Origin: Oikopleura dioica
Taxonomy: Eukaryota > Animalia > Chordata
DNA length: 64,000 bases
Reading direction: 5' to 3'
Assembly (NCBI GenBank): GCA_907165135.1
Contig: OU015568.1
Span: 5,952,001 to 6,016,000, forward strand
The notes under the pieces are model-generated. The model did not search any database and was not told the DNA's origin. It saw only the letters and a list, made by a program, of their open reading frames with translations. This document shows positions 13,277 to 18,740 of the stretch, one piece after another. How positions within the stretch are numbered: position 1 is the first letter of the stretch; each line of letters starts with the position of its first letter. Both the position numbers and the translations under genes were made by a program.

Positions 13277-16033
13277 ATGAGGTTTATCGCGCTGAGTTGC
13301 CTTTCTTCCGCCGTTTTCGCTATTTTGGACATGAATCAACTCATGGCGCTCAAGAATCAAGCTGCTGATAGCACAATGCAAAGTTCAAATAGGTAACTTT
13401 TTTGAACCTGAAGGGACTTGTGTAGAAACCTGAGTGAGGCCCTGAAAACAAGATAGAAAGAGATGATAACAAAGCTGTTTCAGGACGTAACTCAGGCTTC
13501 TTAAGGAGGTAGATATCAAGAATCGGGATTTTCTGGCAGACTTTTCTCCCAATCCTAACATAGTGACCGATGATATTTTTTGTTTTAATAATGAGTTGAG
13601 GCCCTTATCTCGTGCCTATGGGAGGCCGATTTCTAAATTTCCAGAAAAAAATCGCAATAAATGGCGTTGAAAACTCGGAAATCGCTAAAAATGACCATTT
13701 TCTTGGCAGACTTTTCTCGAAACTCTTATATAGGGAGGAATTTATTTTTTTCTGAGAAGTTAGATAAGACCCTTGTCTAGTTCCTATGGAGGCCAGAATT
13801 TGAAATTTCAAAAATTTTTATAAGAAAAAAATCGATTTCCTGTTTTTCACGATTTTCAACGAAAAAATAAAATTTTGAATTTTTATTCAGCAGTATTAAA
13901 ATCATTCTATAGATGTTCCAAGGGGTTTCTGTTAATGTTTTTGAACCGAAAACTAAGTTATTACTTATTTAATTACTAAAAATTGGTCGATCTATTATAA
14001 AACGGGCTAATTTTCGAGATTTTAGAGGCGATTTTGTGAAAAATCACGTGGTCCAATAAAAAAAATTTTTGCTTACAAGTTTTCTCCTTGACGTCGAAAC
14101 TATACGGAGAAAAAGTTTGAGGCGAAAAAATGGAAAATTTTTTTCTTGATATCAACCTCCTTAACAGGTTCTCAAGTTTTGAAACAAAATCTGAGCTCAA
14201 AAACCTGTTAAAAAACCTGAGTCAGGTCCTTCAAAGAGCAAAAAGATAGATTTAAATGACGAAATAGCTCTCACAGGGTCTGACTCAGGATTCAACAGGG
14301 GATCTCTAGAAGATTTGCCTACCTGTGTAAAAACCTGAGTCAGGTTCTGAAAGAATTTATAAGAAATACCATGGAATCAAGATGGCAATTAAATTCTTTC
14401 AGAACCTGACTCAGTTTTTTACACAGGTTTTTTAGGCGTGTTTGGGGCCGAAATCTTGACTGAAGATATTGTCCTTGTCGAATGAAATGAATTTCAGATG
14501 CGAGTTTGATAAGTGCATGAAATGCCTGGCCGTTTTAAAGAAGAAAGATACCACCAAAAGATGTAAGTCAAGTTCATCATCAGTTTCTTTTTTTTTATAA
14601 AGAGAATACCAGGTAGGCTTGTTTTTTTTTCATCTGCGGAGTTAATTCTTTGAGCAGCTCGTTGTTTGCTCAATAATTAATTTTCAAGGTTAACAGAAGT
14701 AGCTTTTGCTTGGGCCAATTATTCAGCGAAAATAATTTATCTTCGATAGTTTATTTATCTTCTTCTTTACTTTTTGCTCGATAATTGGCTTGATTGATCC
14801 TCGATAAACAAGTAGAACATCGCTCTTTTTCTAATAAAAACGAAAATTGTTCGATAAGAGCTACAAAAGACATAAATTTTTATCAAAAAAGTAAATTTTA
14901 AAATAGCCGATTTTAGCTTTGAAATGTGACCAAAATTTAACGAACATAAATATCCATATTAATATATCTTTTGACATCTACGGACATTTCTGGCTGGGCG
15001 GGAGAATAATTCTGTGGACAGAACTATTCTGTGAAAAAACAGAACTATTCTGTTTGAAACAGAACTATTCTGTGTCGAGCTTAACAAAAATGACTTTGAT
15101 TATGTCGTAGATAGGATGGAAAAGGATTGACTTCAGTGACTGAAGTTCAGTCGGTCTTCGAATCTCGCAGCCAAAAACAATTAATAACAATGATAGTTTA
15201 TAATAGAAGCTGAACCGAAGAGGCTATGAAGCACGCTACGGGCCTACGGCCCTTGCGCGCATTTTCTGATAGAGAACTCATTGGGTTGGCAGGGGCAGTC
15301 TTTTTCTACCGCTGGGACTCATTTTTGGCAGCAAACAACTTCTGCATTCGCAGAATAATAGTTGTTTTCGCCAAAAAAAAATTTTTTTTCACAGAATTAT
15401 TCTCCCGGAAAGGGGGGTCTTATCGTGAGAATAATTCTGTTTTTCACAGAATTGTTCTGTGCACAGAATTATTCTCCCGGTTGCCCGACATTTCTCGATG
15501 ACACTGACCATCAAAAGATGTCCTAAGATGTCAATTTCGATGGACATTTCTTGACATTTCTCGACATCTGCAGACATTTTGAGTTATTTCTACAAGTCGC
15601 AACATAAGGCTTTTTGTAAGTTAATGTCTCACAATGTCTAGAGACATCCTTTAATGTCAAAAGATGTCTATAGAAGTCATTTGACATCCCTTGACATTTC
15701 TCGACATCTCGAGACATCTTAAGACATTCATCAAGTCTCAAGATGCCTCTGAACATCATGCAACGTCTCTCAATGTCAAGAGACATTCTTCAATGTCTGA
15801 AAATGTCTCTAGACATTTAAGGACATTCTGAGACATTTATTGGTCAAAATTTCAAAAACTCGATTTAGTATCAAAAATATTAATAATTTTTCAAAATATA
15901 AACTCTTCGACTTCTTCAATAATTCTTGAATTCAGCTGCTTCGTACAACGAAGACGCAGTTTTCGGCTGCACGATGATGTGGGTCTGGCCCGATTGCTGC
16001 CCGCAGTGGCAGAATATGAACTTCCTTTCATAA
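13277..16033 (+). CDS. Small secreted Cys-rich, prohormone-like protein (~92 aa; exons 13277-13392, 14498-14562, 15936-16033)
   Basis: Three GT-AG, phase-matched exons give MRFIALSCLSSAVFA-ILDMNQLMALKNQAADSTMQSSNR-CEFDKCMKCLAVLKKKDTTKR-SASYNEDAVFGCTMMWVWPDCCPQWQNMNFLS*. Both introns are inflated by identifiable TEs. AATAAA lies downstream. The exon linkage is inferred. Confidence 0.6.
13505..14160. mobile_element. Non-autonomous Kolobok-like (TTAA TSD, GG..CC termini) element inserted in a hAT-like MITE TIR
   Basis: TTAA|GGAGGTAGATATCAAGAA ... TTCTTGATATCAACCTCC|TTAA. The flanks rejoin to ctcaggcttcttaacaggttctcaag, a right TIR of the hAT family. Confidence 0.75.
14191..14430. mobile_element. 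Two adjacent hAT-like MITE copies
   Basis: Paired aacctgagtcagg / cctgactcagg arms. Confidence 0.7.
14965..15840. repeat. Foldback element (arms ~14965-15060 and ~15430-15536) followed by a GACAT/ATGTC minisatellite
   Basis: gggagaataattctgtggacagaactattctgtgaaaaa is matched in reverse complement by the right arm. GACAT and ATGTC blocks recur with ~10-bp periodicity. Confidence 0.75.
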
Positions 16034-16577
16034 TGAATTTCGCCTCTGTTCACTTTCTTACTATTCTTGACTAAACAGACTTTTTGTTTCTAACGATAAA
16101 AACTTGGGATAAATAATTTAATTTCAATGTTCTGCAAAATAAATATTCGAGACAGATACATCCCAAATCTTTTATTTTTCAGCAGCGGCAGAGGAGCAAC
16201 AAGTTTGGCTCTTTTTTGTACAAAAGTACTACCGCAAATCTAGGTCGCAAATCATTTGAGATTCTAGGACCTTCTTTTGGATAGCCAATAAGATTGCTTT
16301 ATTTGGCCCACCGACCAATCAAAACCCTCAAAATCCACTTTCAAAATTATTTTCTCCCCACTAATCGTCTCAAAATTAATTTATCCTACCTTTCAGGTTT
16401 TGATTTTGTCCAGAAATTTTATGATTCTGATAACTTTTTCTCCGTGGTAATAAAAACAGAGTCGTAATTTCAGAGTCACGAGAGCGCTTATTCGCCGGTT
16501 TATGATCTTCTGTTTTTGAGAAGAGAAATTAAAAAAACTCACTTTTTGAATTCGAAGTCGAGAAAAAGTAGCTGCAG

Positions 16578-18740
16578 ATGAGACAAGTAACGACACATCC
16601 AAAAGAATTGACGAGAGAAGCGGTTGAGAAATGGCTGGAAGGTTTTAAGAAGAAGTTGAAAAGAACGACGAGCAGAGATGATTTGGACAGACTGCTTTTG
16701 TCCGTTGAGAGACAAGAGTTTGAATATAAATGGAATGCTAATTGGGAGGAGGTTGTTTTTGAAAATGGAGAAGGAAAAGTTTTGCGTTGGGGCGAAGAAA
16801 AAGAAAAATGAGCGATTACCGCATTCCAAAAAACGATTCTTGAAAAAAATACAAAATTGAAAATCGAAAAATCGCGCGATCAGAATTGAAAGAAGAAACT
16901 GGAGAATGGATTCTCGACAAATCTTTCAAATCGATTTCTGAAGGAGGAGAAGCGATCGTTTTGGAAGAAAAATTTGGAGAATTGGACGTTGCCGTCAGGG
17001 TGCAGGCTTTTGACTCGGCGCTCTTTTTGGAAGAAGAGGAGGAGTTGAAATTTGAGATTCATCTTTCAAATGGTAAGAATAATTGTTTTATTTTTGATTT
17101 TTACATTCTTAGATTATGAAACCGCCGAAAACGACGAAAAATATGACGTTCCCGTGATCCCCCGTCATTCCAATATTATCAAGAATTATTGCAGCATAGA
17201 AGTCTTCTTGAGCGAAGACGAAGACAACGATGACTGCCTCGGATGGATAACGATAATGGAAAAGTGCGACTGCGATCTTCGAAGCCGACTCAAAAAAGAA
17301 GATCTCAACTTGGAAGAAAAAAAGAAAATAGCAGTTGGAGTGCAAGACGGACTTGATTATTTGAAGAGCGTCGGAATCTGGCATCACGACAAGAAGCCCG
17401 AAAATGTTCTCTTGAAAGATGGAGAACCGAGATGGGTCGATTACGGGACGTTGCAAGAATTAACTGGAAGAAGGAGCTTACGCGAAATGGGCTACGCGCG
17501 GAGAGGAAGCAAATATAGATACAGTAAATTTTTATGTAAGTTTTTAATTCGGTTATCTTGAATTAATTTTTCGTTTATTTTTTAGATTCTGGTTCTGCTG
17601 CTTTTTCGGGAAGTGAAGAACTTTGTAATGAAGACGGAGGAGAGGGATCGCCACTTCATATTTTGATTCTCTGCGACTGGAAGTCTGCCTGGAGTCTTCT
17701 TTACAATCCCATCGAAGAAGGCGAGCGAGAAATGATCAAAAATGAACTAAAGGTTTTTGGATTCTTCGTATTTTTTCGACAATTTCATTTTTTTTAGAAA
17801 TTCAATGCGGCCTGGCTATCAAAAAAAACTCCAACAACCGATGAAATCAAAAGTTTATCAGAAATCATTTCGCTAAAAAACGCGCCTTCCCATTTTTGCC
17901 TGGACGATCCAAGCTTGACAAAATCCTCCGCGATGGCCAATCTCAAACAGAAAATGACGAAACAAATCAATTTCGACTTCAAAAACGTGACGAAGAATGT
18001 TTTGAACCAGAAAGAAAGCAATCTTTGTGTGCCAATTTCAGTTACTACTCTTTTGAGATGGGCCATCAAAAATGATTTGCGAGTTAAAAATGGATATTAT
18101 GAATTATATTGTTCTTTTGAAAAAATCTTCACAATTCTGACGATGGTGATTTATCCGCGCAGTTTGGCTGGATTAAATTTAAATCCGAAATTCGAAGAAC
18201 AAGAATTCCAAACAAACGAAATTGAGTTGCTTCTCAGAAGATTAAAATTTGAGACTTATTTGAATCCAAGTGGATGGGAAATTATTAAAAGAATGAGTAA
18301 AAGATTAATAAGAGGCAATTTTGATTTCGAGCTAGGTATCTTCACTTTGTTATCATAACTTTGAAAATAATAATATATTTTCAGTGCTCCTCCACGACAA
18401 ATTCTCCTCCACCCGTCCCCTGACAGTCACCGGCGCCTACCTAAATCCCGACGGATCTGTGTTTTCCCACCAAATGGTGCTTGACCGCGTCGAAAACTCC
18501 AAATTCATTCTCCAAAACACACTCATCGACCATTCTGGCACTAAAATCGAAATTCCTCAGAACAGGCCATTCTACGCCGAATACAAAATGATGAAAGATT
18601 GCTACGACTTCTACAAAAAATATGAGTATCGCGGAGACAACGGCGAGATCATGACTCTGGCGAACGAGCAGATCAAAAATATGAAGAAAGAAACTTGGCA
18701 CCTTCTCCCACAGGCTTATTCGATTATTCTCAGAAAATAA
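16578..18740 (+). CDS. Atypical protein kinase fused to a C-terminal papain-like cysteine peptidase domain (~620-630 aa, 6 exons)
   Basis: Kinase motifs: SEGGEAIV, VAVR, catalytic loop HHDKKPEN (17382-17405) and DYG (17438-17446). In-frame splices (17535/17586, 17751/17798, 18333/18386) lead to NQKESNLCVPISVTTLL, FSHQMVL and FILQNT. The donor of intron 1 is uncertain. Confidence 0.75.

What the first reader, a model, noticed from the sequence alone, without database searches (positions are those of the whole stretch)
16578..18740. Protein kinase fused in-frame to a papain-like cysteine protease domain
Seen: canonical GT-AG splices join a kinase domain (HHDKKPEN, DYG, but VAVR in place of the VAIK lysine) to a C-terminal domain with Gln (18008), Cys (18026), His (18468, in FSHQMVL) and Asn (18516, in FILQNT). 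Established: this order and spacing is the clan CA (papain-fold) oxyanion Gln plus Cys-His-Asn triad. Inference: I know no standard chordate protein with this architecture. It resembles effector- or defence-type kinase-protease fusions and could be a self-processing signalling or innate-immune module. It has no signal peptide, so it is likely cytosolic.
Basis: partly seen in the sequence, partly recalled or inferred. Interest (0 to 1): 0.75.

Follow-up and report, generated by a model that had tools for sequence, protein, structure and literature searches.

The report
Expanded Oikopleura kinase–papain-fold protease family
This locus is one, probably recently broken, copy of an undescribed family of more than 130 genes in the tunicate Oikopleura dioica, each encoding an unusual protein-kinase-like domain joined to a papain-type cysteine protease domain that sequence databases do not recognise.

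Summary
Four short GT-AG introns (40-50 nt) join kinase-like exons (VAVR, HHDKKPEN, DYG) in frame to two exons carrying Gln 18008, Cys 18026, His 18468 and Asn 18516.

- **Fold.** An AlphaFold model of an intronless paralogue (pLDDT 79.8) puts the Cys at the start of a helix and the His on a beta strand. All 50 best structural matches are clan CA cysteine peptidases. The top Z is 10.3, and C1 enzymes lead the list.
- **Conservation.** Among about 50 paralogues, Gln is kept in 52/53, Cys in 49/53, His in 53/54 and Asn in 51/54.
- **Sequence searches.** These fail. The Pfam Peptidase_C1_2 match is only sub-threshold, and the Protein Data Bank gives nothing. It is therefore a new family of a known fold.
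- **Family.** The genome (O. dioica OKI2018_I69) holds at least 136 copies with the same exon order. dN/dS is 0.2-0.4. All named database relatives are uncharacterised O. dioica proteins, and I found no paper on them.
- **Kinase part.** The beta3 Lys is always Arg, while the catalytic-loop Asp/Lys/Asn and the DFG Asp never vary.
- **This copy.** Its first exon carries a TGA at 16809-16811 (TGG in paralogues) and a 1-nt frameshift near 16860, so it is probably a young pseudogene.

The scan had already flagged a paralogue 19.5 kb upstream (s1-400340). Function is untested.

The parts
16578..16808 (+). First part of the ancestral exon 1: ATG and the N-terminal helical region (THPKELTREAVEKWLEGF...), frame 0
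   Evidence: ORF. It is homologous to exon 1 of paralogues L003, L004 and L006 and to the N-termini of P0001-P0027.
16809..16811 (+). In-frame TGA stop where close paralogues have TGG (the Trp of 'EKWAI')
   Evidence: DNA alignment. The TGA is also present in the near-identical copy on contig C16 (L002).
16812..16862 (+). Conserved coding continuation (AITAFQKTILEKNTKLK) after the stop, still in frame 0. A 1-nt deletion relative to paralogues lies near its 3' end (about 16856-16865).
   Evidence: homology moves from frame 0 to frame 2 here.
16863..17072 (+). Rest of the ancestral exon 1 in frame 2: kinase N-lobe with GGEA (Gly-loop position) and VAVR (beta3, Arg in place of Lys)
   Evidence: GGEA 48/48, Arg 45/45 among paralogues.
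17073..17112 (+). Intron, 40 nt, GT..AG, phase 1
   Evidence: The junction codon GAT (Asp) matches annotated proteins.
17113..17535 (+). Exon with the kinase core: HSNII, CLGWITIMEKCD, catalytic loop HHDKKPEN, DYG
   Evidence: Pfam Pkinase E 2.2e-10, 40.8 bits against a cut-off of 31.7. Motif conservation.
17536..17585 (+). Intron, 50 nt, GT..AG, phase 1
17586..17752 (+). Exon with the kinase C-lobe end (SGSAAF, CDWKSAWSLLY)
17753..17797 (+). Intron, 45 nt, GT..AG, phase 0
17798..18335 (+). Exon with the linker (LDDPSLTKS motif) and the helical lobe of the papain-fold domain. Gln 18008-18010, Cys 18026-18028, YPRSLAG, SGW.
   Evidence: Sub-threshold Peptidase_C1_2 match over the Gln/Cys stretch. 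In the model the helix starts at the Cys.
18336..18384 (+). Intron, 49 nt, GT..AG, phase 1
   Evidence: The junction codon GTG (Val) matches annotated proteins.
18385..18740 (+). Last exon: beta-sheet lobe of the papain-fold domain. RPLTVTG, His 18468-18470 (FSHQMVLD), Asn 18516-18518 (ILQNT), WHLLPQAY, stop TAA 18738-18740.

Best explanation
The locus is one copy of a large gene family that is so far known only from Oikopleura. The family has at least 136 genomic matches in the 64-Mb O. dioica OKI2018_I69 assembly.

Family members encode proteins of about 650 residues without a signal peptide. From N- to C-terminus they have:
- a helical N-terminal region;
- a divergent protein-kinase-like domain;
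- a conserved linker (LDDPNLTKS);
- a C-terminal papain-fold (clan CA) domain.

Shown here:
- The four-part architecture and exon order are conserved.
- Both halves are under purifying selection.
- The C-terminal domain is predicted with good confidence to be papain-like. Gln71 and Cys77 sit at the start of the central helix, and His198 and Asn216 sit on neighbouring strands.
- In the kinase-like domain the catalytic-loop Asp/Lys/Asn and the DFG Asp never vary, while the beta3 Lys is always Arg.

Inferred:
- The C-terminal domain is an active cysteine peptidase or isopeptidase. It would use a Cys-His thiolate-imidazolium pair, with Gln as the oxyanion hole and Asn orienting the His.
- The kinase-like domain binds nucleotide and either phosphorylates or recruits and regulates the protease's target or the protease itself.
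- The window copy itself is most likely a young pseudogene. Its ancestral first exon has a nonsense codon and a frameshift, while the remaining exons are still open.
For: - **Gene model and catalytic codons:**
- **Family size and exon order E1-E6:**
- **Kinase and protease parts in one uninterrupted ORF:** L041, L046, L047 and P0106. They are also joined in annotated O. dioica proteins P0001-P0032.
- **Conservation of the four residues:** Gln 52/53, Cys 49/53, His 53/54, Asn 51/54. In the wider set: 67/71, 70/73, 67/69, 62/72.
- **AF2 model:** mean pLDDT 79.8, pTM 0.74, helix 77-92 starting at the Cys.
- **VIA-align against 48,161 chains:** all 50 listed hits are clan CA peptidases. Xylellain gives Z 10.3 (rmsd 3.2 over 157 residues); Der p 1 gives 9.8; cathepsin B gives 9.1. 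In cathepsin B, cathepsin C, Cwp84 and falcipain-3 the alignment starts at the chain residue that I recall as the oxyanion-hole Gln.
- **Foldseek weak hits:** enriched in clan CA.
- **Pfam:** Peptidase_C1_2 is the commonest sub-threshold family, in 7/46 members, best E 0.0011.
- **Protein-language-model neighbours:** C39-like and Mac-1 peptidases.
- **Kinase:** Pkinase is above its cut-off. Arg 45/45, Asp 47/47, Lys 47/47, Asn 47/47, DFG Asp 48/48.
- **Selection:** dN/dS 0.20-0.43 in both halves.
- **Exon-1 lesions:**
Against: - No enzymatic or expression data exist.
- Sequence searches do not place the domain in any peptidase family: the Protein Data Bank gave nothing, and Pfam stayed below threshold.
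- Asn is lost in some divergent members (P0057, P0106), and Cys is Ser in a few.
- Lys-to-Arg at beta3 usually cripples kinases.
- The exon-1 lesions could in principle be assembly errors or be spliced out.
Confidence: 0.65

Rival explanations
1. The window copy is a working gene. A 98-nt intron (GT at 16786, AG at 16883) removes the stop and the frameshift, giving a protein that lacks about 33 conserved residues. Alternatively, the two lesions are assembly errors.
For: - The phases of GT 16786 and AG 16883 fit.
- Exons downstream are fully open with all motifs intact.
- dN/dS against neighbours is 0.2-0.4.
- The frameshift lies in an A-rich stretch, and the C16 copy differs by homopolymer indels.
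Against: - In L003, L004 and L006 this stretch is plain coding sequence without an intron.
- The donor GTTGGG is weak and the acceptor lacks a pyrimidine tract, unlike the four clear introns.
- TGG to TGA is a substitution, not a homopolymer error, and it is present in both assembled copies.
Confidence: 0.2
2. The papain-fold domain is catalytic but is not a general protease. It could be a ubiquitin-like-modifier isopeptidase (as in UfSP, ATG4 and ZUFSP) or a thiol acyl- or amidotransferase.
For: - It is cytosolic and has no pro-region or signal peptide.
- UfSP, ATG4, ZUFSP/Mug105, phytochelatin synthase and a CD lyase appear among the structural hits at Z 5.8-7.7.
Against: - C1 endopeptidases score higher (Z 8.5-10.3).
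- The Gln-x5-Cys and His-x(15-17)-Asn spacing is that of family C1.
Confidence: 0.2
3. Both domains are catalytically dead scaffolds (pseudokinase plus pseudoprotease) used for binding only.
For: - The beta3 Lys is always Arg, and the Gly-rich loop and APE motif are non-canonical.
- A few copies have Ser for Cys, or lack the Asn.
Against: - The kinase Asp/Lys/Asn and DFG Asp never vary.
- Gln, Cys and His are kept in 93-98% of copies across paralogues that are only 35-50% identical. This is hard to explain without catalysis.
Confidence: 0.1
4. The copies belong to a transposable element or derive from a virus, and the copy number reflects mobility.
For: - The copy number is high and some copies are broken.
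- Giant-virus C1 peptidases appear among weak Foldseek hits.
Against: - Intron positions are conserved, and copies sit in tandem clusters.
- Similarity between copies ends about 26 nt after the stop and about 140 nt before the ATG. The downstream flank is unique in the genome apart from the C16 duplicate.
- No transposase or repeat termini were seen.
- No significant viral structural match was found.
Confidence: 0.03

Closest known systems
Papain family C1A peptidases (cathepsins B/L/S/K/C, xylellain, Der p 1, falcipain)
   Same: - Best structural matches: Z 8.5-10.3 over about 150-160 residues.
- Same order of catalytic residues and the same Gln-x5-Cys and His-x(15-17)-Asn spacing.
- Cys at the N-terminus of the central helix.
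   Different: - No significant sequence match (no PF00112 hit).
- No signal peptide, no I29 pro-region, and no conserved disulfide pattern noted.
- Fused behind a kinase-like domain.
- Family-specific motifs (YPRSLAGLNLNP, RPLTVTG, WYLLPQAY).
Bleomycin hydrolase / PepC (C1B, Pfam PF03051 Peptidase_C1_2)
   Same: - Cytosolic papain-fold enzymes.
- The only peptidase family that gives recurring sub-threshold HMM hits, exactly over the Gln/Cys stretch.
   Different: - Scores are below the curated cut-off (12.6 bits for the window exon against 22).
- Structural Z is only 6.2.
- No hexameric-barrel features are evident.
- Half the size.
C39 bacteriocin-processing peptidase domains (PCAT1, ComA) and Mac-1/IdeS (C66)
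   Same: - Compact papain-fold domains attached to another functional module.
- Z 7.4-8.2.
- Nearest clusters by protein-language-model features.
   Different: - Bacterial, and fused to ABC transporters or secreted.
- Cys-His-Asp triad.
- No detectable sequence relationship.
Pseudokinases and atypical kinases with Arg at the beta3 Lys position (e.g. mammalian KSR; from my own knowledge)
   Same: VAVR in place of VAIK, with the rest of the catalytic loop kept.
   Different: - No homology beyond the kinase fold.
- Here the Arg is invariant in a family that also keeps HxD, Lys, Asn and the DFG Asp.
- A C-terminal protease domain is present.

Membership tests
Clan CA (papain-like fold) cysteine peptidases | Two-lobe alpha/beta fold with the nucleophile Cys at the N-terminus of a helix and the His on a beta strand of the second lobe | tested here: met
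   - AF2 model of paralogue L041: helix 77-92 starts at Cys77, and His198 lies in strand 194-206.
- All 50 best VIA-align hits are clan CA peptidases, Z up to 10.3.
Clan CA (papain-like fold) cysteine peptidases | Sequence order Gln (oxyanion hole), Cys, His, Asn/Asp, conserved among relatives | tested here: met
   - Codons read.
- Gln 52/53, Cys 49/53, His 53/54, Asn 51/54; 67/71, 70/73, 67/69, 62/72.
Clan CA (papain-like fold) cysteine peptidases | Catalytic residues clustered in space (Cys S to His N about 3-4 A) | not testable with these tools
- Indirect support only: structural alignments to cathepsin B, cathepsin C, Cwp84 and falcipain-3 begin at model residue 71. The matching chain residue is the one I recall as the oxyanion Gln.
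Clan CA (papain-like fold) cysteine peptidases | Thiol-dependent peptide or isopeptide bond hydrolysis | not testable with these tools
   Needs a biochemical assay.
MEROPS family C1 (Pfam PF00112 Peptidase_C1 / PF03051 Peptidase_C1_2) | Significant match to the family HMM | tested here: not met
   - PF00112 gave no hit.
- PF03051 gave 12.6 bits against a cut-off of 22 for the window exon, and a best E of 0.0011 among 46 paralogues.
- Profile searches of the Protein Data Bank found no peptidase.
MEROPS family C1 (Pfam PF00112 Peptidase_C1 / PF03051 Peptidase_C1_2) | For C1A: signal peptide and I29-type pro-region ahead of the mature domain | tested here: not met
   - The domain follows a kinase-like domain.
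- There is no Pfam I29 hit.
- The N-terminus of this copy is hydrophilic.
Eukaryotic protein kinase superfamily (Pfam PF00069) | HMM match above the gathering score | tested here: met
   - Window exon 17115-17534: 40.8 bits against 31.7, E 2.2e-10.
- Annotated paralogues: 33.6-43.3 bits.
- Only profile positions about 57-160 are matched.
Eukaryotic protein kinase superfamily (Pfam PF00069) | Catalytic loop HxD..K..N and the DFG Asp | tested here: met
   - HHDKKPEN and DYG in the window.
- Asp 47/47, Lys 47/47, Asn 47/47 and DFG Asp 48/48 among paralogues.
Eukaryotic protein kinase superfamily (Pfam PF00069) | Beta3 Lys (VAIK) and a GxGxxG loop | tested here: not met
   Arg in 45/45 paralogues. 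The loop reads (S/A)GGEA with only two Gly.

The most novel reading that the evidence does not exclude
The family is a chordate-lineage invention. It would be a cytosolic sensor-executor module in which an atypical kinase domain and a new clan CA protease domain act on each other or on a shared target. One example would be phosphorylation-gated cleavage, or self-processing at the conserved LDDPNLTKS linker. In this reading, birth-and-death evolution expanded it to more than 130 copies for defence against viruses or mobile elements, or for self/non-self or gamete recognition. O. dioica has lost much of the canonical immune repertoire (stated from my own knowledge).
Probability: 0.15. Interest if true: 0.8.

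Novelty: new variant of a known kind. Interest (0 to 1): 0.55.

Why it matters
O. dioica has one of the smallest and most reshaped chordate genomes. A family of more than 130 kinase-protease fusion genes would be among its largest lineage-specific families. In databases it appears only as 'unnamed protein product' or 'protein kinase domain-containing protein', with the protease half unannotated.

Recognising the C-terminal half as a papain-fold domain has three consequences:
- It defines a new clan CA family.
- It gives a domain architecture for which I found no precedent in animals.
- It makes the function testable with standard cysteine-protease probes and kinase assays.

The pattern of tandem clusters, broken copies and moderate purifying selection is typical of defence or recognition gene families.

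Tried and rejected
- **Sequence searches of the Protein Data Bank.** The two window exons, profiles of 46 and 44 paralogous exons and a full annotated paralogue gave nothing meaningful.
- **First mixed alignment of exon pieces (A1).** It was misaligned: the RPLTVTG strand was placed on YPRSLAG. I discarded it.
- **First AF2 run with 26 sequences.** It gave mean pLDDT 49 and I did not use it for fold search. Adding family fragments from the representative search raised this to 79.8.
- **Foldseek against the PDB.** No hit reached E<=0.001. VIA-align was needed.
- **Word search with a whole paralogue.** Ordinary kinases swamped it. Restricting the words to the C-terminal region worked.
- **Second batch of paralogue loci.** The conservation counts therefore rest on about 50 of the more than 130 copies.
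- **Transposon origin and viral origin.** Both rejected.
- **Literature.** Three searches found nothing on this family.
- **Spliced model.** Exons were searched one by one by reference, and an intronless paralogue (L041:154-1035:-) stood in for the joined domain.

Full report
**Observation**

The sequence between 16578 and 18740 on the + strand contains open segments in alternating frames. They are separated by four short introns with GT..AG ends:

| Intron | Length |
|---|---|
| 17073-17112 | 40 nt |
| 17536-17585 | 50 nt |
| 17753-17797 | 45 nt |
| 18336-18384 | 49 nt |

- The phases fit. The residues created at the junctions match the uninterrupted sequence of annotated paralogous proteins.
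- The four codons are as stated: CAG 18008, TGT 18026, CAC 18468, AAC 18516.
- Gln and Cys are 6 residues apart. His and Asn are 16 apart.

**The 5' end is broken**

- In the closest paralogues (L003, L004, L006, 20-65 kb upstream on the same chromosome) the stretch that corresponds to 16578-17072 is one uninterrupted exon.
- In the window copy the Trp codon TGG of 'EKWAI' reads TGA (16809-16811).
- About 16 codons further on, a 1-nt deletion near 16860 moves the homologous reading from frame 0 to frame 2.
- A near-identical copy on the small contig C16 shares the TGA. It differs by several single-base homopolymer indels, so it looks like a haplotig or an unpolished duplicate.
- No ATG could restart the frame before the kinase core.
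- The only GT-AG pair that bridges both lesions (16786/16883) has poor signals and would remove about 33 conserved codons.
- I therefore read this copy as a probable young pseudogene. The remaining roughly 550 codons are still open.

**Family**

- Six-frame searches of the window's own assembly gave 136 matches to the exon carrying Gln/Cys and 127 to the exon carrying His/Asn. Identity ranged from 30% to 88%, and most matches had no stops.
- Many copies lie in tandem clusters, for example C1:16.1-16.6 Mb and C2:11.6-12.7 Mb.
- In all loci with enough flank, the six homologous pieces lie in the same order and orientation.
- Several copies carry the kinase and C-terminal parts in a single ORF without introns: L041, L046 and L047, and the marine metagenome protein P0106.
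- The word search returned 32 annotated O. dioica proteins. They are named 'unnamed protein product' or 'protein kinase domain-containing protein', and none has a Pfam domain on the C-terminal half.
- A full HMMER scan of 1.84 billion representatives with a family profile found 291 clusters at E<=0.001. The 150 listed (E below 1e-15) are mostly short fragments.
- Of the seven looked up, the four that carry a name are O. dioica (Bergen CBY... and Okinawa OKI2018_I69 CAG5...). The other three, like the further cluster members listed with them, come only from ENA assemblies. P0106 traces to a marine metagenome sample.
- The contig lengths identify the assembly as OKI2018_I69.
- Similarity between copies stops about 26 nt after the stop codon and about 140 nt before the ATG. 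The downstream flank is unique, so the copies are duplicated genes and not a mobile element.
- Pairwise dN/dS between the window copy and seven paralogues is 0.20-0.41 for the kinase part and 0.23-0.43 for the C-terminal part.

**The C-terminal domain**

Sequence methods do not recognise it:
- Searches of the Protein Data Bank with single exons or with profiles gave nothing.
- Pfam gives only a sub-threshold match to Peptidase_C1_2 over the Gln/Cys stretch. The E-value is 0.061 for the window exon.
- That family is nonetheless the most frequent weak hit among paralogues, in 7 of 46, best E 0.0011.
- Protein-language-model neighbours are C39-like and Mac-1 peptidases. This is weak evidence.

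It is 55% and 40% identical to the two window exons.
- A shallow alignment gave a poor model.
- An alignment of 114 family sequences gave mean pLDDT 79.8 and pTM 0.74, with residues 72-294 mostly above 85.
- In this model the Cys is the first residue of helix 77-92. The His lies in strand 194-206, and the Asn follows the next strand. This is the papain arrangement.
- Foldseek found no significant hit, but its weak list is full of clan CA enzymes.
- VIA-align against 48,161 representative chains listed 50 entries, all clan CA cysteine peptidases:

| Target | Z |
|---|---|
| Xylellain | 10.3 (rmsd 3.2 A, 157 residues) |
| Der p 1 | 9.8 |
| Der f 1 | 9.4 |
| Cathepsin B | 9.1 |
| Caricain | 8.8 |
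| Falcipain-3 | 8.6 |
| Cathepsin C | 8.5 |
| C39 domains | 7.4-8.2 |
| Staphopain | 7.9 |
| IdeS | 7.7 |
| UfSP | 7.1 |
| ATG4 | 6.7 |
| Bleomycin hydrolase | 6.2 |

- Many alignments start at model residue 71. In cathepsin B (residue 23), cathepsin C (228), Cwp84 (110) and falcipain-3 (45) the matching chain residue is the one I recall as the oxyanion-hole Gln.
- The top Z is above the 7-8 that the tool reports as typical background. The uniformity of the list is the stronger argument.
- Conservation agrees with this. Gln is kept in 52/53, Cys in 49/53 (three Ser), His in 53/54 and Asn in 51/54 of distinct paralogues. In the wider set the counts are 67/71, 70/73, 67/69 and 62/72.
- The Asn is the least constant and is absent in the divergent P0057 and P0106.

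**The kinase-like domain**

- Pfam Pkinase is just above its cut-off and covers only the region around the catalytic loop.
- phmmer against the Protein Data Bank finds nothing.
- Among about 47 paralogues the catalytic-loop Asp, Lys and Asn and the DFG Asp are invariant. So is the Arg that replaces the beta3 Lys, and so is a GGEA motif at the Gly-loop position.
- The invariant catalytic-loop and DFG residues argue for a conserved nucleotide- or metal-dependent function.
- Whether this is phosphotransfer cannot be decided here.

**Mechanism**

This part is inferred. The most likely reading is a cytosolic enzyme whose C-terminal domain cleaves peptide or isopeptide bonds through a Cys-His pair. 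The kinase-like domain would supply regulation or target recruitment. The conserved linker motif LDDPNLTKS, just ahead of the protease domain, is a candidate regulatory or processing site. None of this is shown.

**Comparison and novelty**

- The domain has the papain fold, so it belongs with clan CA by fold, and it works most like family C1.
- It fails the sequence test for C1 and lacks the signal peptide and pro-region of C1A. It is best described as a new clan CA family.
- I found no paper on it, and I know of no animal protein with this kinase-protease architecture.
- The proteins are already in public databases, but uncharacterised.
I confirmed that copy's architecture and its intact first exon.

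**Verdict**

- This particular copy is probably dead.
- All functional statements remain to be tested.

Noticed in passing
G000 contig C16:1053-4992 (L002, L022): A small unplaced contig duplicates the whole locus and at least 1.5 kb of downstream flank at 99.5-100% identity. It differs by several single-base homopolymer indels that break frames, so it is probably a haplotig or an unpolished duplicate rather than a second gene.
   Followed up: partly
L016, L030, L042 (own-genome paralogues); P0023, P0061: A few family members have Ser in place of the catalytic Cys (LSVP for LCVP), while Gln and most neighbouring residues are kept. They may be serine-nucleophile variants or dead copies.
   Followed up: no
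L005/L023 = G000:C4:1490435-1491354: The paralogue closest to the window copy in the protease exons (88% and 81% identity) has no kinase-like exons within 1.5 kb upstream. It may be a protease-only fragment or a partial duplication.
   Followed up: no
P0010, P0011, P0016, P0017 (annotated O. dioica proteins): One subfamily starts with a hydrophobic stretch (about 15 residues, ...SILAILATCIAGMI...) that the window copy lacks. It could be a signal anchor, so not all members need be cytosolic. It could also be a gene-model artefact.
   Followed up: no
P0123 (CAG5114306.1, OKI2018_I69.chr2.g8366) and P0034: - P0123 joins a partial family member to a DnaJ-like J-domain sequence, which is probably a merged gene model.
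- P0034 contains two tandem copies of the His/Asn lobe.
   Followed up: no
window 15226-15330 and 16275-16390: Short stretches upstream of the gene match other paralogue loci at 77-90% identity, in positions unrelated to the gene. They look like small dispersed repeats (MITE-like).
   Followed up: no
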